From Haliotis rubra (Eukaryota), in the NCBI RefSeq assembly GCF_003918875.1, contig NW_025767677.1, positions 124,001 to 188,000 on the forward strand: DNA of 64,000 nt. Reading direction: 5' to 3'. The translations under genes and the position numbers were made by a program. The notes beneath the pieces were generated by a model, which saw nothing but the letters and a program-made list of their open reading frames with translations, did no database searches and had not been told where the DNA came from. Of the stretch, positions 3,213 through 61,000 are shown one piece after another. Each line of letters starts with the position of its first letter. Within the stretch, counting starts at the first letter, position 1.

Positions 3213-3603
3213 CAGTTCTTGGTGACTGGTTATCACCTTAAACCAGGAACTATGCAGTCACTTATCGAGAAGGAGCACCTTATCAATATTGGATTCAAGC
3301 TCTCTCTCATCAGAATAACAAGTATGTTTTCTGTACCTCTTATTCAAGGCATGAAGATCCGGGAAGGAATTTATCTTCATTAACCCAGGCTTGTCTAAGG
3401 GGACTAACAGTTCTTGGTGACTGGTTATCACCTTAAACCAGGAAGTATGCAGTCAGTTATCCAGAAGTAGCACCTTATTTAATACTGGATTCAAGCTCTC
3501 TCTCTCAGAATAACAAATATGTTTTTTGTACAGCTTATTCAAGGCATGAAGATCCGGGAGGGAATTTATCTTCATTAACCCAGGCTTGTCTAAGGAGACT
3601 AAC
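3213..3603 (+). repeat. ~195-bp tandem duplication
   Basis: cagttcttggtgactggttatcacc...gactaa occurs at 3213 and again at 3408. Confidence 0.9.
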
Positions 3604-7363: not shown

Positions 7364-8225
7364 AACAGCATTCTGTTTGTTGTTTAACGCCACACTTGGC
7401 AATATTCCAGTCTCTAAATAATCAAGTCTGGACCAGACAATCCAGTGATCAATATCATGAGCACCGATCTATACAATTGGGAAAATACCATTCAATCTGG
7501 GGAGTACTTGCGCCCTTTACAGTTTATAAACATTGTATGGAACTCCATTCTGGTGACATTATTCATTCCTAAATCAGTATGGCATCCAACTATTGTCATA
7601 GCAGCTAATTCTAAGGCAGGTATTCATGCAAGTAAAACTCAAACAGCGTGTGGTCATAAGGCAAATTCTAGGATGCTCCGCTAAAAGATCAAAGGCGCCA
7701 ACAGTACTTTACCAGGCAATAAAGTACACTCTTTTGCATTAGGCCAAGGTGGAAACATTACATTTAATTTTTTTATGGATAAATGTCATAGTCTGGATGC
7801 AAGCGTCCTCGTACTTTAACTATAATAGTTCACGGCAAAAGTGTACTTTATTACACTATACATAGGGGTAGAGCAAACTGTATTTCATAATATATCAACC
7901 ATGACATGGTTAAGTTTGGGAAATTATTCAAACCTGATTCTACTTCCAGAATCAACAGAATCTTATGATTTCTCCATAATTATGTCAGTTAACTGCTTAG
8001 TGTCCAGGCTCCATTCTCAAAAGCAATTGCATTGCTGAAACGATAGTAACTCGGTTCTAACTCTCATACTTTACCTCAGAATTATGACCATTATAGTGCT
8101 ATGATTGCTTTGGGAACTGAAACCCAAGCTGCTTGTGTTTAATCCTTGACATACATAATGTCAAGGTGCTTGTTTACTATACATGTGGAAAAAGATAACA
8201 GTAAACACGGGTACAGTTCTGTACA

Positions 8226-8231
8226 TTTATT
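8226..8231 (-). terminator. Polyadenylation signal AATAAA
   Basis: Minus strand reads ggAATAAAtgtacagaactgtacccgtgtttactgttatcttttt; UGUA motifs lie upstream. Confidence 0.55.
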
Positions 8232-11200
8232 CCATAGAGTTTATCACATCATGCATTGTCAACAGCTATATACAACTTAACACTCTACACCTGAAAATAT
8301 ACAACTAATCGTCTTTTCAAAAATAAATGGTACATTTGTCACGTAAAATGCTGCCAGCTAAATTTGAGAGAAATTCATCATGATCTGTGTCAACACGTCC
8401 CATGGCTACCACTCAGAAGCTCCTTAACAACAAAAATAGGATTGGCAGACTGACATCAATTTCACAGGAATGAACATGCCGGGTCTTCACTAGTTAAATC
8501 CACCCGTCCCTTCGTCAAACCTACCTTCATCTCGCTACACCTACAGCAACCATATTAGTAAAATATTAGTATCATTTTTACATTTATGAGACTGTTAAAA
8601 CCCATCCACATTGCGACTACAAGGAAACTTACCAACCCATGATGAAAATGAATAGCCCTGTATTTAGTGAAATTGACGACAGTCTCAGCCAATCCCTTAA
8701 CACAGTGCAATAGAAACAAACAATGATGTACAAGAGAAAAGTGGGATATTTCAAAAGAGTCAAAACCACAGCAGTTTTGAGGAGTAATTCATTATCCAAA
8801 CCAAGAAATTCACACAATGAAAACCTCATTTCCATCAAATAAATAAAGCTACCAAGTCCAAAAAAGCTGAAAAATTCAATTCTGGCGAATTTCCAATAAA
8901 ATCCATTAGAAGAATAACAAATACATGTTAGCCAAACAATGACACACAAGAATCGGAATTCCAATAAAATAAAGGATATATAATTGTAATGCATGTTTCA
9001 GCACGTTTAGAAATATTAGTGTAAAACAACTACACAAAACGCTGCTTATTCCCTCTTCAATCCAGCACGTTTTCTGTTGTGTGTAAAGTCTTGCTTCGAT
9101 AGGCAAAGGTAAGATCTCTTGGAGAAACATGAGAGAAAATCAGAATTCTAGTAATCTAGAAAAGGTATAGAAAGGAAGATGTATCACTTCAAATTTCTCA
9201 GGAAATAAAACCATATTGACAGCTATACTGGCAACTTACTTATCAATGTCGATCTACATGAGATACTAGAATTAACTTAGATTGATATTTACACCATTCA
9301 TTTGACAAGGAGCACTTGGCTTGCCACAACTACAATCTGTACACATTCATTACAACATTGTCAGTAACTCACATAAACATGGTGGAATTCTATCCGTAGT
9401 CAAGAAATACAAAGCAGTGCCAGTCAAGTCCTTTTCAAAATTTCATTAATACCAACAGAACTCGAAGCAGTGCAAAAATAATTTATAGTTCAATTATTAC
9501 TTGTCCTGCAAATCAAATTACACCACGCAATAGAATTATTTCATTTTTCGTTAATCGTAAATTATTCATACAATGCCTTCAAATATAAATTCATTCTGTT
9601 TTTGGCTGTTGAGAACATAAATAAACAAATATTGATTAATATATTCAGTATTCAACCAGCCCCAGTTAATGGACCTATCTTTTAAATAATCCTGATGATA
9701 AACACTTTGCTCACTGCATCTATGTACTGATATTTACAGATTCAGTTCCAAGCACCAGAATATTCAAAAAAGGACTTGACAAGCTTCATGGCAGTGGATC
9801 GCGGGATTTTGGCAACCATAAACCCAATTCTGTCAACAATCAACTGTGAAGTGCTAGCCAGCAGCCTATTTTCACAAGACAAGTTTTAAACTCTTCGCTC
9901 TTCATGCCATGATCAATTTCTCATGAAACTCTCACACCTGACAGATATCACTTTCTTTGTACTTCAACAATAGCACTACAAACTATGGCTAGACGATCAT
10001 ATGCCATTTTCTTCAAGAGTCCAGCTAATCAACTGGGGGAAACTAGTATCAATATATTTCGGTCTGTTTCTAGTCACAAGGTCACCCATACAATTTCAAA
10101 TCAATGTATCTTAGCCCAACGATGAAATATTGCACTCTACTGGGTGGAATGGTATGTAACTTTCTTCACCATATACAGGTTATTAAATAGCACAAAGACA
10201 TAAATATTTTCTAAATTTTCAAAATCTTTTGCAAGCTTCAGAACAGAAATTGTTTCTGCATACTATGCAGCATTCTATTAAATTTAACAAAATATATTTA
10301 AATAAGGTGTTTGCCTACTGTTCAAAATCGTTTTCAGGAGAGACTCTCCGAGTTATTCTGTAGCAAGCTTAGCTTTAAGTACACGACACAGGTTCTAGGA
10401 ACCGTAACATAACAAAGACGGACACAAGAATGCACCAACAGATGCAGAAGGACGCATTACATGACAGAATGGTATCCCTGATCTGGTGAGAGTAGCCTCC
10501 CATTACACGTACATCTACGCGCTGACGACATGAAATGACAACATTTCCATGAGCCAATGACATTATGACATGGGGTGACGTGACTTATAAACATAATGAT
10601 CAACATGATATGAGGGTGTTAAATACATGAAAATGTGGAAAAGAACGACAGCAAATCAGTTCCCGATTTGTGAAAATTGCCGATTTCATTCTCAGGGTTG
10701 CACACACAAAACCGAATTTATCAGATATATTTTGCACTAAAATAAATACATTGCATCTCAGGTCAAAAAGGTGCTCGTTTTAATTTCCAATTAGCATTGT
10801 AATCACATTTCTATCTTGTATGCAGTTAATTGTACAAATGGCTTGCCAGAGCACACACTGTGATGATCAAAATGAAACTATGAATGAAGTGATTTACAAC
10901 TGTACACTACAATTTCCTGTACATATTTACACGGGGCGCTATGCCCTCTTGAGCATTCATAGTTAGTGCCATTTTTCCCGACATCGTGCCCACCACAGAA
11001 TATCTTACAGTCCAATATTCTGTCTTTGGCTTACGTGTTTTGATCTTTATGTGCGTACGCAAGCTCTATAAAAACAACTGCCAGAATACTATACCGATAG
11101 CACAACATAAAATGTACCATCAAGCCAGCCATGCAAGAACAGAAGCAAGTCTAACGAACACAATCTGAGACAGCTAAAATGGTCAGCTTAAAAATGAAAT

Positions 11201-12018
11201 TTGGTAAAATTAACCCAGTTGATGGCTCCATATTTACGGAGTGCTCTGTCCACTGCACACTAGCAAATTCCATGAGAAGATATCCTGAGGTCGGCAAGGT
11301 GCCGGCGACACTGAAATGAGGTCCTGAGATCGCAATGTACATCCTTAGAAGCACACAGTACCACTAACAGCTCGACAGACGTGACGGACAGACAGACCGA
11401 TCTGCACCTTCCAGCACACTGCCGTCTGTTTGGTGGTCGTTGCATGCATCGTTAAAGCTTTATGATCACCCACCGTCAATGGTGGTCCCCTGTACAATCC
11501 GTACAGTAATCCATACAGTAGAATCTGTACAGTGACTGTACAGTCAGTACATACACTAAACACAAACGAGCAAAACAATTCAAACTCAAAATAGCTGCCT
11601 TTTCACATCCGGAACTGAACAGACCCAGTCTTTTTTAGTAGGTCCATGCAATTCCAGACAAATTAGAATAATAATAATAATAATCATGATAGTCATATCC
11701 GTGTTATGAATAAGCACATAAGCTTGCCACCAGCCACGCAGGTGTTCCTGCCAGCACACAGACAAGCAAAACCACTACATACACTACGCCCCTGGCATAC
11801 TGTTCCCATTAGTAGAGAAAAGTCACAAAATCTTCAGATTTTGGCTTGCAAAGAACATCTTGTTCAGTTTTTAATCCAATGCACATGGCAACTGTCACTT
11901 CATAAATAAGCCTCAGGAAAAAATCAGTGTGACGTTCAACAAGTCTATTGTCTTGAAAATTCGTAAAGGTGATAAACCATATAGGAAATGGTTCACAGAT
12001 TACATATCCAGGTAAAAC

Positions 12019-12423
12019 GTATATTCCAGTGTTTGTCGCAATCGGGTTGTACTCTATTCCGGGGGTATTCCGTAATCAGGTCTCTTCAAGCTTGCTCCAT
12101 ACCTCATGGCTGTGCTGCCAGAGAGAGCCTGAAGATCAGACTATGTATCAGGTATCATCCAAGTATATCCATAGGTTAAGCAGCACCCTGGGTATCCACT
12201 GGGTATTAGAATACCTCAAGTATCTGCTCATGGTACACCTGGGTATCCTTGGGTATCCTTGCCCTCATCTCCAAATGGTACTCCAGGTAATAGCTTGCTC
12301 CAATAAATAAATGTAATACTCCATTCTTCCTCCACAAATTTGAGCGTATTCTCCTGGTGTATTTCCTCTTTACTGCAAGCATATTCCTAGTAAGCTAATC
12401 CAGTATGGTGTCTATGTACTCCC
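12019..12423 (-). promoter_or_regulatory. GGA-N0-3-UAC motif cluster (proximal 3' UTR)
   Basis: 11 copies of plus-strand GTA(N0-3)TCC in about 400 bp immediately after the stop codon. Confidence 0.55.
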
Positions 12424-12500
12424 AAGCATACAGCAAGCATATTCAAGCATCCTCTTCCTCATCCATGGGGCACACAAGGCCTTTCTGCACGACGTTCTCC

Positions 12501-12632
12501 TCAGCCCACTGTAGTAATGATGATGAGAGCGTGAGCCAGATCCTGAATGTGTTCCACCAGACCTGTTGTGTTCCGGGCTACAGAGTCGTGCGAGAACTCA
12601 CAGGGTGGGAAGATGTGCACCACATAGGCAGG
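12501..12632 (-). CDS. spen: spen last coding exon (SPOC C-terminus and stop)
   Basis: Acceptor tttccag|CCT; PAYVVHIFPPCEFSH...HALIIITTVG*; TGA at 12503-12501. Confidence 0.96.
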   Translation of the reverse strand, partial: PAYVVHIFPPCEFSHDSVARNTTGLVEHIQDLAHALIIITTVG

Positions 12633-13140
12633 CTGGAAATACAGGCAGATCAAGTTACATTACAAGCAAAAACAATACATCCATACATGAAAAACAGCAC
12701 TATGAAACTTTTAAATCTTCTTGACATCAGAAAAGTAATGGTTTCAGAGATTGTATCTAAGTGGGGAATAAATTCCTGCTATATAATTGAGATATGAGAA
12801 CGGCCAAGCACAAAAAACACTGAAAATTTAGCTGGGGTCTTGAGTGTCTTTTATTGCAGATTTACATTGATCTAAAAATCGTTCAAAATGAAACCAAAAC
12901 CCCGAAAATCCATGGAAAATTCTCACGTCTGTATAATGACAGCCTGTAATATATTTGACTGCACAAACCACTGGTTCTTACAGTGAACAATGCCTTGCTG
13001 AACCAAGTCACCAAGCATAACCACCCAATAGAAAAACAGACAGTTAACAGTCGTCTTGGCATCTGTCGTAACCAGGGTGCTTCCCATAGATGTCAAAGAA
13101 CTGGTCTGTCAACCAGCAAGTGTGGCAAGTGTGTACATAC

Positions 13141-13299
13141 CTGAGTTGACCCTGGCATGGGGATGTTGACGATGCCAGCCGCCTGTTTCAGAAGCAGGTA
13201 CTCAATGACACCTTTAGACAAGGCCTTGGTCTGCTCCTCCAGGTCGTGAGGGTCGCGGCCGAAGGGGATAGCCATGAGTATGCAGAAATCCTTCTGAAG
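13141..13299 (-). CDS. spen: spen coding exon 16 (SPOC)
   Basis: Acceptor tttcag|CTT, donor CAG|gtatgt; FCILMAIPFGRD...YLLLKQAAGIVNIP. Confidence 0.96.
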
Positions 13300-13614: not shown

Positions 13615-13736
13615 CTGAGAGTTGGGTTTTACGTCACTTTATAGCAATATTCCTGCAATATCATGGCTGGGGACACCAGAAATGAGCTTCACACATTGAA
13701 CCCACGTGGGGAATCAAACCTGGGTCCTCGGCGTGA
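13615..13736 (-). mobile_element. SINE family A (5'-truncated)
   Basis: Tail plus body up to the B box. Confidence 0.82.
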
Positions 13737-13882: not shown

Positions 13883-14086
13883 CTGCATCCTCTTGGAGAC
13901 TCCATCCAGCTGTGAGTGTTCCATCCTCATTCTCTGGGCTATCCTCAGCGGCTGAAGGGCACCCCCTGGGATCTGGGGAGGCAGGGTCACCTTGGGCAGG
14001 GTGCTGTTGCCAGCAACATAGTGCATCTGTACCAGGCTGTTGTCATTCTTCAGCGCCACAGCACCTTGCCACACAACCGGATATTG
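13883..14086 (-). CDS. spen: spen coding exon 15 (SPOC)
   Basis: Acceptor cttccag|CAA, donor CAG|gtgagc; QYPVVWQGAVALKND...PLRIAQRMRME. Confidence 0.96.
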
Positions 14087-14409
14087 CTGGAAGAAAAGAT
14101 TGTACATGTGATATTGTAACTGGGTTTATCTACACAAAATAACCTTAATCCCTTATCTAATTAGTCTAACTTACAACTACATCCACTGTCATTGGCCTAA
14201 GTAATATCTCCATAAAAAAAACTTGGTAACACAACTATTTTTTAACTGATGAAAATACTTCATGGTAGGGACTACTCCTGCCTTCTTCACTCATTCAACA
14301 TTTCATAAACACAACTTGTTTTTTTAAAACCCTTGTTCCAGACAGGTTATTTTCCCCTATCAAACTTGCCTCCAGTTTCCTCATATGTTTGTCTCTGGGC
14401 ATATCGTAC

Positions 14410-15156
14410 AAGGGACTGCGTGTCTGCATCAGAGATTGCTGGATCATCTCTGGCACTCCTGGACCGGGCAGACGGGCACTCTGTGGCTGGGTCGGGTTCC
14501 CAGGCATCATCACCTGGGGCCCACCTTGCTCCTGCCGAGACACAGACCGATGAGCCTCCACTGCTGCTGCTGCTGCTGCTGCTGTTGCTGTTGCTGTTCC
14601 ATCCTCATCTTGTCTAAAATCTGAGGTGGGAAATGTCCTGGTGGTACAACAAGGGACACATCACGACCAGGGATGAAGCCTGGCTGGTCGATGCCTGGAT
14701 ACATCCTTGGGTCGATGGGCAGTCGGATTCCCTGTGGGAAGAGGTCTGGTCTGTAGAGATGGGGAGGGACACCTGGAGGCATTTCTGGTCTCTGTCCTAC
14801 CATCCCTCCTGGTGGAACAAACGCACTGGGCGTCGAGGATGGGATCCGTCCGTCAGCTTGAGACATCATGATCTTATGATCATACGGCAAGGGGTAGGAT
14901 GGCTGTGGTCCCTTGCTGCTGCGACCCTCCTGTCGGAGTTCAGGGTCGGCAAGATTCAGGACTGTGGGAGACTGGGAAGGATGAGGATGTTCAGGCATCT
15001 TCCTATCACGTGCAGCAGCTTCCTGAAGCATTATGCGGTGCTGCTGTTGTTGCTGATGCTGTTGCTGTTGCTGCATGAAGTAGATCATCTCTCTTGACGG
15101 AGGCCTCATTTCGGGTTGTGAAGATGGAGTTGGTGCATTACGAGGACTATCTGCAT
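14410..15156 (-). CDS. spen: spen coding exon 14 (polyQ; apparent frameshift, donor uncertain)
   Basis: Acceptor tttag|AT, with an alternative AG 6 nt downstream. The frame switches at the CAG tract 14561-14596. Candidate donors give exon ends at 14525, 14514 or 14410. Confidence 0.65.
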
Positions 15157-15337
15157 CTAAAATATACAAGGAAAACGTATGTACATTCAAAACAACTAAT
15201 TCAGGCAGACATTCCTTCCACAACCAGATATTGTTAAGCATCAGTATTGTCCATCTATTCATGGCATTCTGAATGGATGAACATTGTTTTACTCAACAAT
15301 GAGCAAAGTTCCCGGATTATCAGGCTAAAGCTAATAA

Positions 15338-15440
15338 TGAGAGAGTGAGTATGGATTTATGCCACTTTTAGCAATATTCTAGCAATATCATGGCGGGGAA
15401 CACCAGTAATGGGCTTCACACATTGTACCCATGTAGGGGT
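15338..15440 (-). mobile_element. SINE family A (5'-truncated)
   Basis: 3' half only. Confidence 0.82.
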
Positions 15441-15598
15441 TTAAACTAATAACATATTGTTTGCTTGACAGGAAGAGGACATGGCTACCTATTCTGACTG
15501 AGGGAAACAATCCAAGATTTCTGTCACAGGTAATTTGAGTGATGTGATACTGATGTGATCTTTATGTGGGTCGATGACATTCATGTAATGCACCTCAC

Positions 15599-15624
15599 CT
15601 TTGTTCTGCCTGAGCTGCTGCTGC

Positions 15625-15656
<32 letters not shown>

Positions 15657-15734
15657 CATCTGAGCCTCCTGATAGATCATGCGTCCTGGCTGACCTGACA
15701 CAGGCACGTGTGGGTTGGGCAGACGCTCAATCAC
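15599..15734 (-). CDS. spen: spen coding exon 13 (polyQ)
   Basis: Acceptor ttgcag|GTG, donor G|gtgagg; phase 0/1. Confidence 0.85.
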
Positions 15735-16013
15735 CTGCAACAACAGCAAATATTCAGACATTGTTTACCTTTACCGGGTTATTGGGCACTCTCCCCATCT
15801 GTTGGATGTTTGTATGGTTAAAGGCATAGAATTATACTAGTTGACATAAAATACTGAATGAAACCTTAAAATATATTTGTCTCAATCATTCATAATGTCC
15901 ATTTTTAAGATCATAAGGAAAAATTATAAGTTTAGAGCAGATCCAGTTACACCACAAGTTAAGTTGTATTAAGCATCATAACAACAAAGTAAGCATTGTC
16001 CAACCTTGCTCAC

Positions 16014-17767
16014 CTGGCCTACAGGGCTGGCGGTCTTGGGAGAGAGGGAACTCGGGTGGCCGACGACAACTCCAGCGATGAAGGCATTGGCTGCTGATGT
16101 TGCAGGTGGAGTTTTGACACAGATGGCAACGTCAGGAGATGGAGCATGCATCCTGGGTTGTGGTCCTGACTGGGGATGACGTCCCTGACGAACCTCAGAT
16201 TCAATCTTTTGATTCACAATCCTCTGAATGTCTGATGTCCTGTCCATCCCTCCATGACGCATGTCTGCAAACCTTTGCTCTGCTCGATGTATCTGTTCCC
16301 TTCTCACAAGGTTCTGAGGGTCATCTGAAGATCTGATCATGTGGGGTAAGACTTCACCTTCCCTCTGTCTCTCTCCACTACGGCCCTGATGGATTGCCTC
16401 CTGCAGCTGCAGGTGCTCCTGCATGTGGTGCATCGTCTCTGGACGATGTCGGATCTGCTCCTCTCGTCTCATCTGTTCTTCCCGCCTCAGCTGTTCCTCG
16501 AGATGACGTTTCTGCTGCTCAGCTGACATAATTTGCTCCCCAGCTGCCAGCTGCTGACGGATGTGATCAGCTTGGGCCCTCTGTCTCAACTGGTCAGCTG
16601 CCACATCTGATACAGACTGTCGTTTCAGTTCGGCAATCTGTCTCATCTGTTCAACAGGTCCTGCTTGACGGTTCTGATCCCGCTGAAGGTGGGCTTGTCT
16701 CAAGTTTTCAGATGTCGGCTGCCTGGCCATGTCCCCAACAAAGTGAGGTTGCATCTGTCCTTGACTTGGAGGACGGGACATATCTCTGGAGTTCATAGCA
16801 TGAGGATTAGTCATTGGCTTTCTTGGACCCTCTTTGCTGTGATTCTGGGATTCTCTGGGACTCACTGGAGACATCAGTCTTGGGTCTACATGAGGCATGA
16901 ACGGGTAGCCATGAGGCCCTGGCATCCTCTGACCTGCCTGCATCCCAGGGATCATGAATGGAGGTGTACTCATGTGAGGTGGATGTGCTGCTCTTCCTTT
17001 GGCTTCAGGACCAGGTTTACCTGGTTCAAGTTTAGGTTCAACAAGTTGAGACTTGGGAGGCTGGTCTCTTGGCGGTCCTGGCATAACCTGGAACTGGACA
17101 TGACTGTGTGCACTTGGCGGCCTTTGAATGTTTATAGTATCTGCACTGCTGGCCGGCACATGGGTCACAGGGAGCTGCACACTCTGTGGTCTCTGTGGCT
17201 GGATCCCCGAGCTTGACATCTGTGGAGGTGGGGGTGTTGTCATTTGTGGAGGGATGCTTTTTGGTTTGGGTTGAGCTGGAGCTGACACAGGAGAAGCCAA
17301 AGCTTTGCTTATCAATGCAACAGGGTTCTGCATGATACTGCTGGTTTGTACACTAGCCATAGGCTGTGTTACAGGCATTGATGTTGATTTACCCACATGA
17401 TGGCCATGTCTCTGCACATTGTCACTGAACTGAGCAAGGTTACCGAGATTGTCTTCATGTTTAATCGGTGCAAGCGACGGCATGGTTGTGTTCGGCAGCT
17501 TTGCCATAGGCATATTGCTCTGGGCTTGTAGCATGGGATTTTCAGGCACTGGGTGGTGCTTGGTGGAAGTTGGAGACATCCCAGGGTCGTTGCGGATCTG
17601 CGAAGCTATTGTAACAAGAGCAGGACTTGGCATGCTGACAAATGTTGAGAGTAAACTTCCAGGTTCAGAAGCTCGACTGAGTTGGGAATGTTCAGATTTA
17701 ATAGCATGCTCTTGTTTCAGATTCTGGGTAAGGATGTCATAGATTTTGGAGTTGACACTCTTTTCTT
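16014..17767 (-). CDS. spen: spen coding exon 12 (P/Q/H-rich)
   Basis: Acceptor ctctttcag|AA, donor CAG|gtgagc; open for 1754 nt; phase 1/0. Confidence 0.88.
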
Positions 17768-18068
17768 CTGAAAGAGAAAAGGCAAAAATTTGGATTAGAT
17801 TAAACACAAACTCCATGGCAACATTATCAGAATAATTTCTGAGGAAAGATAGACATGCATGTTTTGTGAATTGTTTGATCAGCATTCTAGAAGTTGGGGA
17901 GTCAAAAACTTTATGGATGACAACTTCTTGTTTATTGCATAGAGCGACATATCGATGTAGGTTCTTACACCGTTATCAAGATAAAAGTGTTTTGTGAGTC
18001 ATATGTTGGTATTGATAAGACCTGAGATAAGAAATTAGTACATGTACATTGAACTCCGAACATCTTAC

Positions 18069-21000
18069 CTGAAGACGCTACAACTGTGGGAGTTGGCACA
18101 GGCATGGACACCGGCAATGACGTCTCTGGTGGCTTCTCATACTTCACAGGCTCTGGCTTATCTCCATCGTCAGTCATACCAAAGACGCCCTTGGAGACGT
18201 CATCAATGATCTTGTCAACATGGCTCATGAAGGACGAGGTATCATTGGACACAGGTTGAGAAGCAAGGGACTGCTCTGCTGCATGTTCAGCAGCAACGCT
18301 CTGCATGATGTTCTTGATGGCCTGAGCTTGAGCTTCAGCTGGAGTGAGATGAGTCCCGCCTGGGGCAGTAGGAGGAGAGTGATGCTGGTGTTGAGTAAGG
18401 AGGAACAGAGGTTGGCTGAGGAGGAGGAATGGCTGATCTGGTTTGTGGTGTTTGATGCTGTGGTCCAGTCTCAGTTTCTGCCTTAACTGGTTCTGCATCA
18501 GCTGATTTTTTCTTTCTGCTTCTGAGAGTTCGGTAGTGTTCTGTCTTCTCCTCTTGATCTTGCTCACTGGTCTCAAAATTATAGATATTTTCCTTGGAGG
18601 TTGGTGGTTTATCTTCTGGGAAGGAAGGAAACTTGGGGGCTTTCCACTCATCTGACCTCCGACCAGATTCTTTCTTTCCACTATCCATCTCCAATTTTTC
18701 AAGTTTTACAACAGGAGAGCCCAATTCAGCAGCTTTTGGAGAAGCTCGGCCCCTTGGTGATGTTGAATTCTTTGGAGATTGAGCATCACCTCTCTGTGCA
18801 CGAGGAGATGTAGAAGATCTGGTTGGGAGTGGAGAAGTTCCAGACACCATTGCCTTGTAATTTGGGAGTTTTCGTTTACGAGTAGATCTTTGAGGAGTAC
18901 ATGGGCTGACATCTTGAGATGGTTTGTCATCTTCTTCAGAAGCAATAACTAAATTGCCCTCCTCTGGCTCTGGAAAACTGTAATTAGTAGAATCTTCCTC
19001 TTCCTGGTCATCTGTCTTTGCCATGGCACTCTCACACATCTCCAGGCGAGAACTGAATGGGTATGTTTTTCCTGAAAAGCTTTCATCCGAAGTTGATGAC
19101 CTTCGTGTGGTCTCCTCGCCCCAGACTGGTTTCACAGGCTCAGGATCAGAAATGTCTGCAGTATTTTCTTTGTTGATGTTACATGCTCTTGGTTTCCGCC
19201 CTCGCGCGAGGCTCCTCGTCCACGAGATCTATCTGCCCTTGGAGATCTTAATCTTCTTGGCTGGTCTATCACAGAGGTGATATGCTGAGGAAGGTCTTCG
19301 CTTTCAGATTTATCAAAGTCCCATTTATCGCTGTCAGAACTCAAACCAGATTTACTGAGTGGGTCTGAAGATGATTGGTCCTCCGGATGAGTTGGTTCAA
19401 CGGGTGTTTCAACTTCATCTCGAGATCCCTTGTTCCTGGTCGACCGCCTTCCTCTCCTTGGAACTCTCTTGTTGGGAGTTTTGCGAGCAGGTTCGGGTTT
19501 GGGTTCAGCAATGACCAACCTGTCATCAAAGAGACTAGAATCCATGTCTGGAGAACTAAATATGCTTGTTTCAGGAACAGGTTTATTAGCAACAGAGACA
19601 GGAGTTTCTGGCTGAACTTTCTCGGGGGGTTTCGGCACAGGATCAGCCTGCTTTTCTATTTGTATTACAGGTTCCTCTTCCTTCACTTGTTGAAGATGCT
19701 GGGGGGCTTCCTGTTTTTTCAGATGGAGTGGGTTCAAGATCAACTTTCCCAACATGTTGTGGAGACATATCAGTTCCTTGAATGTGAGCAATTGCTGCTT
19801 CTGCCTCTTTCAAATCAGACAATCTGTCCTTCTCATTCAAGACTGGTTCTTCTAGATGTTCATCAGCAGGTTGTAATGAAATGTCAGGGACATCAGTTTT
19901 GAATGCACTTCCTGAATCCAGGTCTTCAAACAAGATAGATGCTACTGCTAGGGCTGCTTCATCAGAGGCAGCTTGAGCAGCCTTTTCATCATTAGTTATG
20001 TCAGTATAGGAGGGATAGGTATCTTCGGGTTCATGATGTTCTGGGGACACCATTGTAATGGATGAGATACTTTGGGAACTTTGCAATGAGGGAAAGCTTG
20101 GAGCATCTGTTGAAGGAGTCCCCTCAGCCATTGAACTTGGAATCTTGGGCAGAGATGCAGTGTTTGGGATTCCGAGGTGGATTGTCAGGTCTTCCTGTGT
20201 TTCTGTATCATCCTTTTCTTCTGGGAAATGTATAACAAGCTTCTTTGGATCCATTTCTTCCAGAGACCGCGGGGAATCATCAGCAGATTTGGCTTCTTCA
20301 AATGTTGGCTTGAATCTCTTTGTCCAATCTGGATCTAAACTCTTCTTAGGGAAAGGTTCAGGTGCATCATTACTGTCCTCAAACGTAAATTCATCATGTT
20401 CAACAATGGTCTCCTTCTTCGGTGATTGGAATGAGAATGGTGATTTCTTCACTTCCACAGGAGGGGATACAGGATCTTCATTTTCCCTTGGAGGACTAGC
20501 TAAGATGTCAAATACTTTCATCAGATCTGGAGAAGAATCAATAGCCCTTGGAGAATGGTGTTTGACTACTTCCTTAGCCTTAGGTTCCACTATATCTGGT
20601 TTAATTTCAACTGGAATTTTAGGTTTTGGTTCAGCCTCCTTCTTTTCTACAGGCTCAGAAGTAGGTTTCTCAATCGGTTTCTCAATCAGGTTTTCAGAGA
20701 CATGTTTCTCCTTATCTTTTTTCTTTGTCTTCTTAGGCTTGTCAGTCTTAGGGCCTTTCTCCTTTTTGGTTCCCTTTTTGCTTTTCTTCGTTTCAGCCTT
20801 GTTGTTAAAACCAATATCAACTTCTGGACTCTCGATCTCTGTTGACACTTGGATTTCAACTGGGATAGGAGTATCATTGATATCAGGTAAAGGCTCAGGT
20901 GACAAAGTGATATCAAATTCATGAAATTTAGAATCCACAGACGCATGATCAACCACTGGCTCTTTGACAGCTGCAGTTACCAAATCTGAAACACTTTCTT

Positions 21001-29654: not shown

Positions 29655-29766
29655 AGTATCATCATCAAAAATGGTATCATCATCAAAAATGGTATCATCA
29701 TCTGAAATTCGTATTATTATCTGAAAATGGTATCATCATTCTGAAATTGGTATCATCATTCTGAAA
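29655..29766. repeat. ~21-bp intronic tandem repeat
   Basis: (aaaatggtatcatcatc)-type units. Confidence 0.8.
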
Positions 29767-36520: not shown

Positions 36521-38061
36521 GATTCCCATGTTGACCAAGATTCTCAATGAACCCACTCCCATGGGATTCCGGGTAAGAATAGGTCCCAGATACCTCAGCT
36601 TGTTGAACAACTGACTCAATCACTTGGTAGCTCATTGGAACTATAGCTTGATTGTATTGTACAGGATTGATTATTTACAAGCTTTTGTCATATAGTTTGA
36701 ATATTGCTGAGGGCGGCATTAAACAACAAGCAAACACACACACTCACTGACACCTGTATGAACGATGGAACTGTGGTAGCGCTGAGCAGGGCTAAAAGTA
36801 CCTTTCCATCTATTCACTGAATTTAGTTGTGTAAGTCTTTCCATACTCAAAATGTCCGTCACAAGTGGGTATGCCACAAGTACTAGCAAGTACCACTTGT
36901 ACATAACCCTGCTTGAAATTTGTGCTGACCCAGCACATTGACACAGCATGCATCAGTACTAAAACAGTATGGTTGTGGTATTCATCTGCCAGTTACAAAA
37001 CCTCATTTCTTCTTTAAAGTAACTGCCAATTATAAATACTTCATATTTCTTTCAAAATAACAACACAAAAAGCTACACACAGTTTTTCAACAACAGTTAC
37101 CCAAGAGCAGATTATTCACTTCTGCAGCCCAACAGTTAAAACATACTGTTAAAATTGTGTATGAAGTTCGACACGGATTGACCCAGAATACATCAGTGAG
37201 AAACACGGACAAACAAGCATGCTGAATGGACAGAAAACAAGTTCACCTATCAGTGTGTTTTCCATGGGTGTATTTGCCCACCCCAAATATCCTCTCCCTT
37301 GGGCGTCCTCGATACTGTTGATCATTATTAAATACGCTAGTTGGCTTTTCAAATGCAGTTGTGTCGCTTGGAGGTGGGGTTTCATCTTCAGTTCTGGAAA
37401 ACATAATACATTTATTCAAGCTGGTTCATAACAACGCGGAAATTGAAGGCATGCTGTTAATATGAAAATTTCATGCACATGTTTTAGTACACCATATGGG
37501 ACATTGCATTATGTCATTGCATATCCCTTATGCATATTCATATGCCTTATTCCAGTTACTCTGCATACACCAACATTAAATCCTAGTTCTATGTACAGCT
37601 ATTCATGGGTGTGCCATGATCTGTCACTAAATGACTTTTTCTCATTATCAGTATGATTACAATGGCTTGTGTTAAACACTGGATTGGAAAATGTATATAT
37701 GGGTCGATCGTCAGTATCTTTAACATCAAAGCAATGCAAAAGCACAGCCTGTGGGTCTTTCAATGTGTAATGATGTTTTCATGAAAAAGGGGGAAACCAT
37801 CAATTAAACTCGGATTGCGTAAGAAGCAGTCATGCAAAATCAACAATAGTCAGAACACAATGGCATCTTTCTTGATTATTTGAAGGGATGGAAGTGTAAG
37901 CTGGGCCCTGCAACTGTCTAACAATAGGTTATATTGTGTTTACTCGCGGCATCATGGAAAAGGCTGAACAACAATTGTACGTGTGCACCTGAAACAGCAA
38001 TCTGGGCAGTCCCAGTGGCTAAAATTCAAGAGTTCTCCCGACTTGATATTGCTGGTATTTT

Positions 38062-54600: not shown

Positions 54601-56399
54601 TTCGGTCCGTTTCAGTTCAGTATATGAAATATTATCATAATGCAGAAAATCGACAAGAGCCAAACCATGCACTGTTTAATAACATGAAAAAAACAAAACC
54701 ATAATCTTTGTTATATTGATTTAATAAAATTGTCATTTTATGACTAGACAGAAATGATGGTACAAAAACCCAAATACCGAATCTTTGTATTGCATTACGG
54801 AATAATACAGCAGTTCTACTAATACCGCAGTATACCGTTTCACCCCTAACTGTATTTATACTTTTGTAAGTTTATTTATTTCTAACCAGTAACAAATAAC
54901 ACTTGAGCCTTGCCCACCCCATGGGCAGGAAAACTTCCTTGTGTGTATTGTTTGTGTGTGAATGTGAACTATTCATGTGACATAAATACAGCTGTGTCAG
55001 TGATTCCTGTCTGCGTGTACCAACAAAAATGACCTTGACACTTCAGCAAGGTCACCATCTCCTTGCTGCCACCATCCCTCCATTTCCACAGCTCAAACAA
55101 CAAAATCTTTGTCAATTCATATTTGAAAATGTTTATTTCAAAAAATCTCAAACATATAAATAATCCAAACATTTGTAAATTGTGCATAAAATGCCCTGGA
55201 AAAAAGTAACAATAAATTCAACAAATAACAAAGTGTGAAAAAAAACCCCACATCCTTAAAGCCTTGACATTAACACCTTGAAGTCAATTCTGATTACAGA
55301 AAAGAAACAAAAACTCACTTCACAGAGGAGAACAAGGCCAAACATAGAGCATTTCCTGTTAGTAGAGCAAAGCCAGGGAAAGCACTTGTGGTTATTTCCA
55401 ACACATTTTGTGCTTGGTATTCAAAATTCTTGGCCAAAGTCCAGGAGAACCCAGAGGAATCCTGGGCAAGGCGCATCATTTCCTAAATGTCATAGCACAA
55501 GGACAGGCACGTAGCAAACTTGCATAAATAACTCAAACAAACAAAGCTGCATTTTCAAAATGGTTGCTAAGCACATCTGAAATTATTCAAGCTAGTCATC
55601 TCCACACAGCAATCCATTAAGATCTAAAGGTTGGCTGTTCGAGTGTCAGCCCAGGAACCTCTTTGTGGCTAAGCAACAAGCCAACAGGCCTGACATGTCA
55701 AAGAGGCACTTGCAATGGTGGATACTTCAGAAACATGACTTAATATTTGAACTCCTCCGTGAAGCCCAATACAATGAGACATTTTTCTATCCCTCACATG
55801 TATTTTTCCCTTTTTGATATTATTTACCTCCATTACAATCTTTCAAAATTTCTGAAAAGGGTTCATTAATTCTCTTTTGACAATTACATTTCCCAATAGA
55901 CTGAAAGTATCTTACTTTGAAATGGAACTATTCACTAATCAAGACAATTTCTCCACTTAGCCTCTCATCCAAATTTTCTTCAAAATGATGCAATTTGTCT
56001 TATAAGCTGACAGTGACACAAGCTGAAATATTATCTGTTCTTCTGGGCCTAATTTAAGTCTTCAGTCAAAAACCAATATTTGATCTGCAATGTAAATGTC
56101 ATGGCTCTTCTGCTAGTTTTGTAAACATTTCAGTTCTTAATTCACATTGCCTCAAGCTTCAAATAAACATAAAATTGAACAAAATTGCAAAACCAAAAGC
56201 ACTTTTTCCTTCTTGATGGTGATCTGTGTTGTTCTTGGTCTGTGGTTGAAGCACTGGCAAACGGCAACCATCAGACAACAGTTGCCAGAAAAGGAAGCAG
56301 ACGTCTCTCAACCAGTTGCTGACTTGGGCTACAGCTTGATGTCAGGTCAAATCTGTGGACAAAATGGCGGCAACCATATCCAGTCTTGAGCATGGTCAT

Positions 56400-57040
56400 C
56401 AGGTATCCATTGGCATCACATACATAGTATCCATCAAAGAACACACAGGCAGTACAATCCATTTGGGTATTTAATCCAAGGGGTGGTATCCACAGCAAGT
56501 ACTCCATCAGTGGGCTTTCCATGCCTACCAAGCATGCCTGGCTTTCACCAGGCTACTTCGGGCAAACACGATGTCTGTAGACAAGTACTCCAAGTAATCC
56601 ACGTCTGCTAGTATGTCCGTTGGCCTGTCCATCCATGTGTGCATAAGTGCAACTCTTGACTGCATAGTAATCCATGAGATATGTAAAATCCATGATGAGA
56701 TCTTTAATAGTGTACTCCAGGTAAACAAATCCAAGCGATGGGTAAATATCCGTTTTCCGCTGCTAAACAACGTCAAATGTGTAAATCCAAAATAAAAGAG
56801 CGAGAAAAAAGTACAGTTTCAACAACCGCGCACGCAAATATCAATACTCCAAACACAACAGTTAACTGCATGGTATTTCTGAAAGTGTGTAAAGACAGTA
56901 AAGAGTGATAATCTTAGAGAAGGTGATATATCCATCGTAATGATCCAGTGAGCTGTATACTCCAGGGTAGCAACTCCAATTGAGAGCAGGGACTAAAACA
57001 AAAATCCACGACGGGCAAGTACACTCGAGGTACTCCAATA
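56400..57040 (-). promoter_or_regulatory. UGGA-N0-3-UAC motif cluster (intron 2)
   Basis: 13 copies of plus-strand GTA(N0-3)TCCA in about 640 bp. The cluster is directly visible; its function is inferred. Confidence 0.6.
56525..56762 (-). CDS. Candidate alternative terminal or poison exon after RRM1
   Basis: Long polypyrimidine tract, TTGAC and tttag|cag NAGNAG acceptor; in frame with exon 2 for about 78 codons to TAG. Confidence 0.3.
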
Positions 57041-57763
57041 GAATATCCAAAAGAGTACAATGTTCCACATAAGAGGGGAGCAAAATAAAAGCTTGTCACA
57101 TGATGTGAAATAGCAACTAAACCACACAATTGAAGTTTTACTTTACACGCACAGCACAAAACAAAACCGACCAAGGCAAAGGCTTATGTAGGTGTAGTGT
57201 TCCAAAACAAAATCCAAAATGGCAGTTTGTATAAATAGTCCAAGTTGAAGGGCAATGCTCCAAAGATGGCCAGGGTTGTTTCCCTGTCCAGCAACGGAAA
57301 AGTAACTAAATGCTGAATTGAACTCAAAGTCTAGAAAACTGTCTCAATTTTGTTGCACCTGGAAATCAGCTCATAGTTGTATGGTTTAATTTCTACAACT
57401 GTGTGATCACCCAGTTGCATAGATGCAGGTGTCAATGGCATCTACTGTGGTCACGTGACAATCCAAAATGGCGTGCAGCTACAGTGTCTAGTACAATGTG
57501 AACGACTGTTAATGGTTTCTGTGAACACTGCAGAAGATACGCAAGGGGTAAGTCTTGTACTAAGTCATTGTTCTACATATGGCAATTGGTTTAGTGAGGT
57601 GTTGGATGTTTGGCAGAAAGAGATAGACTACTACAGTACATGTCAGACGAGTGGACCATTCACCCGGATTTCTCCCACCGGGAGCTGGACGACAGATTGA
57701 CGCCATCCCCACGATAGAAACACCACCATCAACCAACATCGGCAGGCAGAAATGTCAACTTAC

Positions 57764-58033
57764 CCCTTTGGCCAAGGGAATGATCCTGCTCCACGGGCAG
57801 CACTTCCAGTTGGTACATGAAATGTTCCGCGGTCGGGTTCATGAGTCCGTGTGACAATGCTTCCTGTTGTAGATCCCTCACAGTATTCCGTTCTCAGGGA
57901 ACAGTTCTCAAGTAAGTTCTCTGCTCCGTGGGCCTTGGACGCCGACTTGATGTCCATAAACGCCACGGTGGCCGCTGGGCCTCCATCACTCTCCTTGTTC
58001 AGGTGGAGTTTTACACTCTGGATCTTACCATAT
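57764..58033 (-). CDS. spen: spen coding exon 2 (RRM1 body)
   Basis: Acceptor ctatttcag|A, donor GG|gtaagt; 270 nt, phase 2/2; YGKIQSVKLH...AATVAFMDIKSASKAH matches SPEN RRM1. Confidence 0.93.
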
Positions 58034-61000
58034 CTGAAATAGGAATAAAGGTCAAGGTCAACAAAGGGACAGGACAAGAAACTATCTGCTTTAAACAATA
58101 TATTTCTCTGAAATTCAAAAGAGTTGTGATAGACATTAAAATATTCAAAGATAGACTTTTTTAAAAATTATTTGCTTCATTCCTGAAAATCAGATGAAGA
58201 ACATGAAAAGACACGTTTGATCAAACTGGATGGAAAACAAGACAACATAATTTTATGCTTTCAAACACTTTCATGTTAAAGTACAAACAAAAAGATCTAT
58301 CTTAGGGGCAGACCATTTGAATTTAATGGAAAGTGGTATGCTTGGATTGTTTGTTATAAATAATGTTCCTGAAAACAAATTCTTCACTTTAGAAAAAAGC
58401 CTGTTTAAAATTCTCCCACAACCCCTGCAAGGGATATAAACTGATAGGTCTTAACAGAATACGTGTTTCTGGCCTAAATCCTTAATAGCAAAATGGGTTA
58501 CCATGAACAAGCCATGAACATTTTATCCAACTATTACCAACATACTTCCATTGATTTCCTCTAGTTTTAGGACAAATCTATTGATCCTGTACTTCAGCAT
58601 CCTCCCATAACAGTGCGACAAGCATTCAGACAGTAATATCAATTTCAGAACATGTTGAATGTCAACAGGCCCTAATGTGTCCAGTGGGTGGTACTGGGTT
58701 TCATGTTTTTCAGTGCGCTACTGAATAAGGTTAGTAATGTATACCCAAACACTGCCATGTTGGGAACTCAGGGTATTACATTTGGTTATGAAAGGTTCAA
58801 ATAGGCAGATAGTAATCTCATGATTTCCATGTTTCTGTGGATGTATTGGATTGGGTGTCCCTTGTGATGAGCCACCAGACACACTATGTCTACAAGAGTC
58901 TGGAACAGAGGCAATATGAAACAATGAGAGAGATAGAGAGACTGGCCAGTTCCAAGTTCCTGTATTATGTGCTTAGGAGTGTAACGTAGGGTCTTTACAG
59001 ATAAGCTGGCTGTGAAAAATATTCTCATGTTATTTATCAGATTAAATGGAGACTGGGCATTTATTCCAAACTTGAATCCTCCAAAAACATATTAACTGAA
59101 ACACTTGCGCACAATGACAAAATCATCCTTGCTTGCATAACAAGGTGAAATAGTAACAATAGAATATACACATGACCCCAAACTCAGAAACATCCTGTAA
59201 AGAAATAGATAAATCTTAGAGCTGATGTATTTTACCTTCCAAATTCAAAGTTTGTACTTGCTCACACTCTTATAAGAATAATTGTTGCCAATTCCAGTCT
59301 CAGTGCCAAAGTTACAGTTTGAAAAACACAAACTGAATTCAGAAGAATAGTTTTCAAACATTTTGAAATGCAAATTCATTCCCACAAATGCAGTATGAGT
59401 AAACATTATGAACATTTTAATCACTTCGAAAGCATGGTGTAAAAAAAACCCGCAAAGTAATGTGTTACTGTCAGTCTCCAAACTCTGTGTAATAGAAAAT
59501 TGACCAAAGATATCAGGTGATATTTCAGACCCTTCATTATTGATTGCCACACATAAATTAAATATGACTTGCAAACAAGCTGACACTTGGGTACAAGGTC
59601 TTATGCCCAGCAAACATCTGTGCAATTGATCCTAACATGCCCATATTGAAATATGGGTCTGACTGTTGGTTCATCAGCTGTGCGTGCGCTGTGTGACTTC
59701 ATCTTATATGTCCTTGACAGGAGGCAAGATACCAACAGCTGCAGCTTGAGATGACCTAACTATCAGAGCATGAAGCTGTCATTGGAAACTGATAACACAA
59801 CTTGAGAGCATTTATCATCAGTGTTGAACAACACCTGACACTGTAATGTAGGACAGTCATCTCTCTAGTACCACGAACTCGGCATCTATATTGAGTTGCA
59901 AATGGACATGTAACAAATTCAATCACCATGGAAACATATCTGCCTTGAGACAGACAGGACATACAGGAATTTATGCATTTATTCAAGCATGCACTTTCTG
60001 TGAACTCGAAAGTGGAGGACATTTCCAAATTTGATGCATCAGGAACACAAATTATGTCTGTTGCAAATCCCTCTGCAATTTGACTTGTACCATATGCTGC
60101 CATGTTTTTTTGCCATGAACTGACTTACCTTCTGTGTGCTCACAACTAAAAACACATTCAAAATGTTTGAATAGAAGGAAATGATATGGTGCTATTTGTC
60201 AAATCTGCACACACAAAATAGCTACAACACATGAAGTTTGTCCACTATTTGCTGTTCATTACAAAATATTCATGCCTTTAAATAGTTGAAAGTGTGTCGA
60301 CATTCGTTTCCTGTTGGCTTAATTGTCTCGTGGCAAGTAGTTTTGTGTTGGAACTGCCTGTTACAGCGTAAACTAATAACCCATTTCTATCTACTTCTTC
60401 ACATTGGTATGCCTGATGTAACACCTTCAGTATACTTTGTATAATATGTATATGCTGATCTTGTAAAAACATCCTTTTCCAGAACATTTTTGAAAATGCA
60501 GACTTAACCATTTCTCCATAAAAACCATCTTCCTCCCTTCACTGTATACACTTTTTGTGTACACTAATCAAGAGAAGTTAAGAACTACTCTTCCTTCATA
60601 TAACAAGCCATCTAAAATGCTACAATGTGAAATAATCGGCTGATCACAACTTCTTTTCAGTAGCATATTATTGTTTAATAAATTCAAAGAAATCTGCTGT
60701 GTACCCTGTCTAGCCATTAACATAATCACTGATAATAACACAACACGTATTCAACACCAATGCAGGGCACGATCATGTGATCAAACCATGGTGCAATTGG
60801 TTCAGCCTTCCAGACCTCTCTCCTATCAGCTATAACCCTATCCGTCAGTACAGCTTGGATTCACGTGTGATATCACTGCCTCGCTACCAGCCAAGCTAGC
60901 TGTTCAGCCCAACAACACAAACCAGCCAACAGGCTTGACTCCGCAGGAACAGCGAACCCCACCTAGGTGCACACCTGCTAGTAATTCCTATCTAGATAGT

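What the first reader, a model, noticed from the sequence alone, without database searches (positions are those of the whole stretch)
12019..12423. Second array of the same GGA(N)UAC motif immediately after the spen stop codon
Seen: GTA(N0-3)TCC starts at 12019, 12065, 12152, 12163, 12192, 12243, 12253, 12278, 12346, 12359 and 12416. Transcript examples are UGGAUACCCAGG, AGGAUACCCA twice, GAUACCUG and UGGAGUAC. The array is on the same strand as the intron 2 array 44 kb away, with no obvious alignable sequence between them. Inference: independent selection for the same RNA motif at both ends of one transcript, acting co-transcriptionally in the intron and on mature mRNA in the UTR. The recurrence strengthens the case that the motif is functional.
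Basis: partly seen in the sequence, partly recalled or inferred. Interest (0 to 1): 0.78.

Follow-up and report, generated by a model that had tools for sequence, protein, structure and literature searches.

The report
UGGA-word array in spen 3' UTR
Just after the stop codon of this gastropod's spen gene lies a real, one-stranded cluster of a short RNA word (UGGA…UAC) that also occurs in the gene's second intron and in other molluscs' spen 3' UTRs, so it is probably a protein landing pad that helps control spen RNA.

Summary
All 11 GTA(N0-3)TCC starts are present at the stated coordinates. Dinucleotide shuffles give about 1.2, and the opposite strand has none. It is the top-scoring of all 4096 such gapped motifs in the segment.

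A spliced transcript contig from a related species shows the array lies in the mature 3' UTR, which is about 4.3 kb long. The array runs from +79 to +482 after the stop codon. It is single-copy, not a transposon, not a detectable minisatellite, not structured and not an m6A (DRACH) cluster.

GGA and UAC are the two most enriched trinucleotides in both this array and the intron-2 array. The shared core is U-GGA-not-C.

UGGA-rich clusters start the spen 3' UTR in another gastropod-like locus and in two bivalves, without alignable sequence. They are absent in one bivalve, a teleost and one other deuterostome.

Intron-2 arrays recur in a hemichordate, a teleost and a third deuterostome.

Best reading: an RNA-binding-protein landing pad tied to spen feedback, read by an SRSF1-type SR protein and/or by SPEN itself. 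This mechanism is inferred, not shown.

The parts
12019..12424 (-). The array: 11 GGA(N0-3)UAC words, +79 to +482 after the stop. They include GGAUACCC three times, GGAGUAC twice, GGAAUAC, GGAAAUAC, GGAGAAUAC, GGAUAUAC, GGAUGAUAC and GGAAUAUAC.
11990..12465 (-). Wider GGA-dense stretch: 25 GGA in 510 nt (49 per kb against 13 per kb in the locus). U precedes GGA in 52% of cases and C never follows it.
12240..12261 (-). The only detectable tandem repeat inside the array: 2.2 copies of a 10-mer (TGGGTATCCT on the + strand). It shows that local slippage contributed.
12501..12632 (-). Last coding exon of spen (end of the SPOC domain), with stop codon TGA at 12501-12503.
8180..12500 (-). spen 3' UTR, about 4.3 kb, unspliced in the assembled transcript of a related species.
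   Evidence: (contig record 9 of run X17, with two GT..AG joints upstream)
8226..8231 (-). AAUAAA at +4270, the likely main poly(A) signal. The transcript contig ends about 50 nt beyond it.
11870..11875 (-). AUUAAA at +626, just past the array. It is a possible proximal poly(A) signal, but its use is not shown.
13141..13299 (-). Penultimate coding exon (SPOC).
13883..14107 (-). SPOC-domain exon (Pfam PF07744, E 3.6e-11).
56351..57101 (-). Sister array in intron 2: 26 UGGA in 750 nt, with U before GGA in 90% of cases. It starts about 750 nt after exon 2.
57838..58035 (-). Exon 2 of spen (N-terminal RRM1 region), which fixes the sister array in intron 2.

Best explanation
The segment is a degenerate, irregularly spaced array of a short single-stranded RNA word at the very start of the 4.3-kb spen 3' UTR. 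The word is U-GGA, then 0-3 mostly A/U/G bases, then UAC(C). The array partly grew by local duplication, but it is kept as a word cluster rather than as an alignable sequence.

It most likely works as a multivalent landing pad for an RNA-binding protein on spen RNA. It would be the second of two pads in the gene; the first lies in intron 2. Both would feed into the negative feedback on spen expression that is documented in mouse.

The most likely direct reader is an SRSF1-type SR protein. Its pseudo-RRM reads GGA and its RRM1 reads a C at a flexible distance, which would explain the variable spacer. In mammals, assemblies of such proteins recruit SPEN. Direct contact by the Spen RRMs with GAUAC, as on the XIST A-repeat, is an alternative or an addition.

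Shown here: the array, its strand, its place in the mature UTR, its single-copy state, and its recurrence across species.

Inferred: that a protein binds it, which protein that is, and the feedback.
For: - Enrichment and strand bias of the motif.
- The same two trinucleotides top both arrays. TAC is 4.4x and 3.1x enriched, and GGA 3.2x and 2.7x. The arrays share an excess of 7- and 8-mers.
- The array lies in a spliced transcript of a related species. It is covered by a single contig in a DNA run, while nearby intronic repeats reach depths of 1e3-1e6.
- In an unbiased k-mer test of the first 1 kb of UTR against the species' own locus, the top words are:
  - TGGA, GGAT and TGGAT in the window;
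  - TGGA (17 hits, 4.8x, p 2e-7), GGATT and TGGAT in bivalve L009;
  - GGATT (9x) in gastropod-like L007.
- Saccostrea has 6 UGGA in its first 250 nt.
- A rank test against each species' own windows, over six orthologues without the window, gives a Fisher p between 9e-5 and 4e-2. In the first 300 nt, TGGA ranks 3-15 of 256 in five of seven orthologues.
- The UTRs cannot be aligned with each other.
- Four neighbouring genes' 3' UTRs have 0, 2, 2 and 0 UGGA in their first 300 nt.
- Sense-strand intron-2 arrays just after exon 2 occur in Glandiceps, L008 and Scleropages.
- C is depleted at +1 to +3 after GGA and raised at +4 to +6. At +6 it is 30 of 105 against an expected 16.5% (p 0.001) in the non-window arrays.
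- Literature:
  - Mouse Spen RRM2-4 crosslinks to Spen mRNA, and Spen loss raises Spen RNA (PMC7282817; bioRxiv 10.1101/2025.05.21.655143).
  - GAUAC is the conserved 3' half of the XIST A-repeat core and the peak of SPEN crosslinking (PMC10870365).
  - SRSF1 is needed for full SPEN recruitment. Deleting GG16,17 of the core cuts both SRSF1 and SPEN association. SPEN RIP peaks are GA-rich.
  - The SRSF1 pseudo-RRM reads GGA, and RRM1 reads C at -4 or +6 (PMC7813835).
  - Mouse Spen intron 2 is a regulated alternative-5'-splice-site region with RBM15 signal (PMC8327914).
Against: - No binding or expression data exist for this animal.
- The 3' UTR cluster is absent in L003 (bivalve clade), L008 and the teleost, and is weak in the hemichordate.
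- The word UGGA was settled on after L007 and L009 had been read, so part of the cross-species test is post hoc.
- Controls are few: four other 3' UTRs, and no genome-wide null.
- Site-by-site conservation among congeners could not be read, because the difference table was truncated.
- UGGA words are no more accessible than same-composition 4-mers in predicted folds.
- Carter et al. found no linear motif in SPEN CLIP sites beyond AU-richness.
- Trotman et al. map direct SRSF1 binding on Repeat A to AWCG, not to GGAUAC.
Confidence: 0.5

Rival explanations
1. A neutral, lineage-restricted low-complexity stretch. Replication slippage and small local duplications seeded a GGATACC-like unit. Its decay left many GGA and TAC words, and nothing reads them.
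For: There are 2.2 tandem copies of a 10-mer and several short internal direct repeats, such as CCTGGGTATCC three times and AGCTTGCTCCA twice. There is no predicted structure (z -1.18) and no Rfam match. There is no cluster in L003, L008 or L012. The UTRs cannot be aligned.
Against: Neutral decay should erode GGA and UAC as fast as the spacers, and should keep a period. No period is detectable beyond 22 nt. The same words top a second, unalignable array 44 kb away on the same strand. UGGA-type words are the top-enriched k-mers at the same position in distant molluscs. The array is retained in congeners that differ by 2-4%.
Confidence: 0.22
2. A landing pad for an RNA-binding protein unrelated to Spen feedback. 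Candidates are FMRP (WGGA and ACUK words), CNBP, an hnRNP, or the proteins that bind UGGAA or GGAAU repeats. It would set localisation, translation or stability of spen mRNA like that of any other target.
For: The conserved core is only UGGA plus a non-C base. ACUGG is co-enriched in L009. Many proteins read GGA-containing words; this rests on my own knowledge of the FMRP, CNBP and SCA31 repeat literature and was not checked here beyond a title.
Against: The word clusters sit at two fixed places of the spen gene itself across phyla. That is typical of self- or pathway-feedback elements in genes for RNA-binding proteins. The first readers of about 800 windows of this genome noted no other gene with this word, which is weak evidence.
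Confidence: 0.18
3. A cluster of microRNA target sites, such as three GGAUACCC 8-mers within 65 nt.
For: GGATACCC occurs three times. Proximal 3' UTR positions suit miRNA sites.
Against: The other eight words differ in spacer and flanks. The intron array and the other species' arrays use different extensions (UGGAUUA, UGGAGUA). An intronic copy makes no sense for a cytoplasmic miRNA.
Confidence: 0.04
4. A DNA-level element (a homotypic cluster of transcription-factor sites or an enhancer), or a cluster of m6A sites.
For: Motif clusters can be enhancers. Mouse Spen RNA is heavily m6A-methylated, including intron 2.
Against: There are 11 sense and 0 antisense occurrences, and DNA sites usually occur in both orientations. 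DRACH is depleted at 7.8 per kb against 21.9 per kb, and GGAC is absent from the array.
Confidence: 0.04

Closest known systems
XIST/Xist A-repeat (the SPEN-recruiting repeat)
   Same: It is a multicopy short RNA word array that brings SPEN to an RNA. The 3' half of its core is GGAUAC(C), the word seen here three times as GGAUACCC plus further GAUAC copies. GG16,17 of that core is needed for SPEN and SRSF1 association.
   Different: The A-repeat has 7.5-9 regular copies of a roughly 25-nt GC-rich core, with a CAUCG tetraloop half and U-rich spacers. Here there is no CAUCG, no U runs and no period. This array lies in a protein-coding mRNA of a mollusc. It is not a homologue.
Mouse Spen self-repression and the Spen intron-2 element
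   Same: It is the same gene. Spen protein binds Spen RNA and lowers its output. The start of intron 2 is a regulated alternative-5'-splice-site region with RBM15 signal, at the position where the sister array lies here.
   Different: The mouse element is described through m6A, and DRACH is not enriched here. No 3' UTR element is described, and the teleost checked has none.
SR-protein (SRSF1-type) GGA-rich binding platforms, including GGAAU and UGGAA repeat RNAs
   Same: They share dense GGA words, U before GGA, and C a few bases downstream. The structural study used the test RNAs UCAUUGGAU and UGGAUUUUUCAU.
   Different: This array is in a 3' UTR rather than an exon or a satellite repeat. It is irregular, and binding is not tested.
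Autoregulatory elements in the 3' UTRs or introns of genes for RNA-binding proteins, such as plant FPA
   Same: The logic is a cluster of sites on the protein's own transcript. FPA, a spen-family protein, limits itself through its own intron 1.
   Different: The outcome here (decay, retention, poly(A) choice or transcription) is unknown. FPA acts by premature polyadenylation, which is not shown here.

Membership tests
Xist A-repeat-type element | 7-9 regular tandem copies of a roughly 25-nt core separated by U-rich spacers | tested here: not met
   TRF finds only 2.2 copies of a 10-mer. There are no runs of 5 or more T.
Xist A-repeat-type element | 5' half of the core with CAUCG(G), an AUCG tetraloop hairpin | tested here: not met
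   0 CATCG and 0 ATCGG in the array.
Xist A-repeat-type element | 3' half of the core GGAUAC(C) | tested here: met
   3 GGATACC(C) and 6 GATAC in the first 600 nt of the UTR. GATAC is 6.8x the locus background over the first 1 kb.
Xist A-repeat-type element | Recruits SPEN (and SRSF1) in cells | not testable with these tools
   Needs CLIP, RIP or in-vitro binding.
Self-regulatory cis-element of an RNA-binding-protein gene | Lies in the transcript of the gene that encodes the protein | tested here: met
   A spliced contig covers the SPOC exons and the UTR. SPOC Pfam hit. RRM exons found. Orthologues are named split ends or msx2-interacting protein.
Self-regulatory cis-element of an RNA-binding-protein gene | Kept at the same place of the gene in other species | tested here: inconclusive
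   Present in L007, L009 and Saccostrea. Weak in Glandiceps. Absent in L003, L008 and Scleropages.
Self-regulatory cis-element of an RNA-binding-protein gene | The protein's level changes its own RNA through the element | not testable with these tools
   There is only a mouse precedent for the gene as a whole.
SRSF1-type SR-protein binding platform | GGA density well above background | tested here: met
   49 GGA[AGU] per kb against 13 per kb in the locus.
SRSF1-type SR-protein binding platform | C at about -4 or +6 from the GGA | tested here: inconclusive
   C is raised at +4 to +6 in most arrays. At +6 it is 30 of 105 against 16.5% (p 0.001) before correcting for 20 offsets.
Decayed minisatellite unique to the species | A residual period, and absence from relatives | tested here: not met
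   No period beyond 22 nt. Contigs of two related species span the array.
Dispersed repeat or transposon fragment | Many copies in the genome | tested here: not met
   One contig at single-copy depth covers the array, while 13642-13736 and 12790-12930 reach 1e3-1e6.
m6A (DRACH) site cluster | DRACH or GGAC enrichment | tested here: not met
   DRACH 7.8 per kb against 21.9 per kb, and GGAC 0.
Known structured RNA family | Rfam match or an unusually stable fold | tested here: not met
   No Rfam hit at E up to 1. Fold z-score -1.18.

The most novel reading that the evidence does not exclude
UGGA-N-UAC/GGAUAC word arrays on spen's own RNA are an ancient bilaterian feedback code. Intron 2 would carry it from molluscs to vertebrates, with a second pad in the 3' UTR of molluscs. 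The arrays would nucleate SR-protein assemblies that Spen senses. The GGAUAC half of the mammalian Xist A-repeat would be a late copy of this code, so X-inactivation would have borrowed Spen's own self-recognition signal.
Probability: 0.2. Interest if true: 0.85.

Novelty: new variant of a known kind. Interest (0 to 1): 0.58.

Why it matters
Spen/SPEN is the silencing effector of Xist and a repressor in Notch and nuclear-receptor signalling. How it chooses RNAs is still disputed: direct RRM contact, or sensing of SR-protein assemblies. A recurrent word array on its own transcripts, in animals that have no Xist, would give a natural and ancient target on which to test that question. It would also offer an origin for the GGAUAC half of the A-repeat. 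For this finding alone the gain is smaller. It shows that molluscs carry a second pad in the mature mRNA, so feedback could also act after splicing.

Tried and rejected
- **Coding sequence on either strand.** Only short, non-repetitive ORFs are present.
- **U12-type 5' splice sites on the + strand.** GTATCCTT occurs twice. Only 2-3 of the 11 words fit, and the transcript evidence is for the minus strand.
- **Transposon or high-copy repeat.** Rejected by depth.
- **Long-period internal duplication.** No internal HSPs were found.
- **Rfam families** and **stable structure**.
- **Preferential accessibility of UGGA**.
- **DRACH/m6A cluster**.
- **A-repeat homology**.

Searches that led nowhere:
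- Word searches with the last exon and the SPOC exon gave one hit and none.
- The 2146-aa exon search gave only loci that do not reach the 3' end.
- An exact look-up of ten window ORFs, meant to fetch congener contigs, found none in the collection.
- Two look-ups failed because of the isoform and length rules.
- L010 and L011 gave no usable 3' UTR. L010's terminal exons were not found in reach, and only 136 nt of UTR is held for L011.
- The per-site difference tables were cut off before the array, so substitution patterns among congeners could not be read.

Full report
**What is there.** The window carries a spen (split ends / msx2-interacting protein) gene on the minus strand.
- The last three coding exons are 13883-14107, 13141-13299 and 12501-12632. 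They encode a SPOC domain (Pfam E 3.6e-11).
- N-terminal RRM exons are found at the other end of the window.
- The nearest named relatives are split ends / msx2-interacting proteins.
- The stop codon is at 12501-12503.

In the transcript they read GGA(N0-3)UAC.

**Is it more than chance?** Yes.
- Dinucleotide shuffles of the 413-nt segment give 1.15 +/- 1.0 hits, with a maximum of 8 in 5000. Eleven are observed.
- The motif ranks first among all 4096 motifs of the same gapped form.
- The reverse complement occurs zero times.
- Only this place and 56.4-56.8 kb reach 6 or more hits per 413 nt in the window.
- Inside the 3' UTR, 11 hits fall in the first 500 nt. Only 6 fall in the next roughly 5 kb scanned, all of them between +750 and +2250.
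- In about 306 kb of spen loci from other animals, on either strand, no 500-nt window exceeds 4 hits. The one exception is another spen 3' UTR with 6.

**Is it in the mRNA, and is it a repeat family?** A 5017-nt contig of run X17 comes from a related species that differs by about 3.6%.
- It joins 14088-13883, 13299-13141 and 12632 onward with CT..AC (GT..AG) joints. It then runs unbroken through the array, apart from one diverged stretch (9591-9767) replaced by other letters, to about 620 nt beyond 8800.
- AAUAAA lies at 8231-8226. The 3' UTR is therefore about 4.3 kb, and the array is at +79 to +482 of the mature message.
- In a DNA run of another relative, a single contig covers 8800-12785 at single-copy depth. 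By contrast, 13642-13736 and 12790-12930 in the flanking introns reach depths of 1e3-1e6.
- The array is therefore not a dispersed repeat.
- TRF sees only 2.2 copies of a 10-mer at 12240-12261. The repeat finder shows a few short internal direct repeats.
- Local duplication contributed, but no period survives.

**Same word in both arrays.** Each array was compared with the rest of the window on the sense strand.
- TAC and GGA are the two most enriched trinucleotides in both arrays: TAC 4.4x and 3.1x, GGA 3.2x and 2.7x.
- GGA-to-TAC gaps of 0-3 nt are over-represented relative to independent placement: 11 against 4.1, and 14 against 4.2.
- The arrays do not align beyond a 13-mer. They share 28 8-mers, against 7.7 +/- 3.3 for control segments with a maximum of 18.

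**Other species.** I fetched spen 3' ends through an exhaustive SPOC search and contig look-ups. A SPOC tree places the loci as follows, with moderate support.
- The window groups with L007 and the gastropod Batillaria.
- L003, L009 and Saccostrea (L006) form a bivalve clade.
- L008 groups with the vertebrates.
- L005 is the hemichordate Glandiceps.

As literally defined, GGA(N0-3)UAC is clustered only in L009, with 6 per 500 nt. That is the locus maximum, 400-900 nt after the stop. It is faintly clustered in L007.

Reading these UTRs showed dense YUGGAU(U/A) words. An unbiased k-mer test of the first 1 kb of each UTR against its own locus gave these results.

| Locus | Result |
|---|---|
| Window | TGGA, GGAT, TGGAT are the top words |
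| L009 | TGGA, GGATT, TGGAT are the top words (p 1e-7 to 6e-7) |
| L007 | GGATT is the top word |
| Saccostrea (L006) | 6 UGGA in the first 250 nt |
| Glandiceps (L005) | Weak signal |
| L003, L008, Scleropages | No signal |

- Rank tests over the six orthologues analysed (the window left out; Scleropages was fetched later) give a combined p between 9e-5 and 4e-2, depending on word and window size.
- The UTRs cannot be aligned with each other.
- Four 3' UTRs of neighbouring genes have 0, 2, 2 and 0 UGGA in their first 300 nt.

The word choice was partly post hoc, so I treat this as moderate evidence, not strong evidence.

**The sister array.** Sense-strand UGGA clusters lie just downstream of exon 2 in three more animals.
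- Glandiceps: 11860-13034.
- L008: 843-2390, up to 14 per 500 nt.
- The teleost Scleropages: 14153-14652, 16 per 500 nt.

This independently confirms, for three species, the claim of earlier scan note s1-349415 that distant animals carry such clusters in spen. The intron pad is old. The 3' UTR pad looks molluscan and patchy.

**What the word looks like.** Across the eight arrays:
- U precedes GGA in 52-100% of cases, against a background of 41%.
- C almost never follows GGA.
- C is depleted at +1 to +3 and raised at +4 to +6. At +6 it is 30 of 105 in the non-window arrays, against an expected 16.5% (p 0.001 before correction).
- DRACH is not enriched. In the window's arrays it is depleted, and GGAC is absent from the UTR array. 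These are not m6A-site clusters.
- There is no Rfam match, no unusual fold (z -1.18) and no special accessibility of the words.

**How it most likely works (inference).** Four published strands fit together.
1. Mouse Spen RRM2-4 crosslinks to Spen mRNA, and Spen loss raises Spen RNA (PMC7282817; confirmed on nascent RNA in bioRxiv 10.1101/2025.05.21.655143).
2. The XIST A-repeat core has a conserved GAUAC half. That half is the peak of SPEN crosslinking and changes reactivity on SPEN binding (PMC10870365).
3. SPEN recruitment in cells depends on the GC-rich core, including GG16,17, and on SRSF1. SPEN peaks elsewhere are GA-rich and SR-protein-like.
4. The SRSF1 pseudo-RRM reads GGA, and its RRM1 reads a C at a flexible distance on either side (PMC7813835). 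That is a natural reason for a two-part word with a variable spacer.

I therefore read the array as a multivalent pad that loads an SRSF1-type protein and/or Spen on spen RNA, as part of spen feedback. Because the pad stays in the mature mRNA, it could also act on export, stability or translation.

Two precedents concern the sister site. Mouse Spen intron 2 is a regulated alternative-5'-splice-site region with RBM15 signal (PMC8327914). The plant spen-family protein FPA limits itself through its own intron 1 (PMC8116057).

Two published points argue against a simple version of this reading. Carter et al. found no linear motif beyond AU-richness. Trotman et al. map direct SRSF1 binding on Repeat A to AWCG rather than to GGAUAC.

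**Comparison with known systems.**
- The array works like, but is not a member of, the A-repeat family. It has the GGAUAC(C) word but lacks the CAUCG half, the U-rich spacers and the regular period.
- It fits the general class of self-regulatory elements in genes for RNA-binding proteins.
- It fits GGA-rich SR-protein platforms by composition. Binding is untested.

**Verdict.** Self-binding by Spen and the division of labour between the intron and UTR copies are not shown. The feature is a new variant of a known kind. The main remaining risk is that I have no genome-wide null for this species.

Noticed in passing
window 13642-13736 (intron between SPOC exons): A very high-copy short repeat. 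Summed contig depth is 1e4-2e6 in all four runs of four related species. The shared flanks read GAGTGAGTGAGTTTGGTTTTACGCCGC... and ...AACCACTAGGCTACCC, so it looks like a SINE.
   Followed up: no
window 12790-12930 (last intron): A second multi-copy repeat, with depth of about 800-1000 in DNA run X13 and many partial contigs.
   Followed up: no
window 38061-38988: A 30-nt minisatellite, 30.9 copies at 89% match, inside a spen intron.
   Followed up: no
window 29656-29766: An 18-19-nt tandem repeat, 5.8 copies, in an intron. On the sense strand it carries GAUAC in each unit, which gives the window's densest GAUAC spot outside the arrays.
   Followed up: partly
window 12370-12470 (sense +30 to +130): A second repeated word at the very start of the UTR: (A)UAUGCUUG, 3-4 times, interleaved with the first GGA words.
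   Followed up: no
window 14500-21540: The long coding region downstream of the 2146-aa ORF is split into overlapping ORFs in different frames, for example 17965-18702 against 18335-19135. This means either small introns or frameshifts in the assembly.
   Followed up: no
L007 10184-10459: The last 16 codons of the SPOC exon (MRLEHSQLDGVAKRMQ) are repeated three more times at 76-nt steps just downstream, as a tandem duplication of the exon end and its 5' splice site.
   Followed up: no
L010 13620-14119 and 11396-12131: Very dense sense-strand UGGA clusters, up to 19 per 500 nt, downstream of the SPOC exon. The terminal exons were not found in this locus. These could be an intron array or a repeat.
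   Followed up: no
L012 (Scleropages) 50746-51245: A UGGA peak of 10 per 500 nt about 5.2 kb after the spen stop codon. It is unclear whether this is still 3' UTR.
   Followed up: no
window 3213-3603: A 195-nt tandem duplication, 2 copies at 92% match, downstream of the spen 3' end.
   Followed up: no
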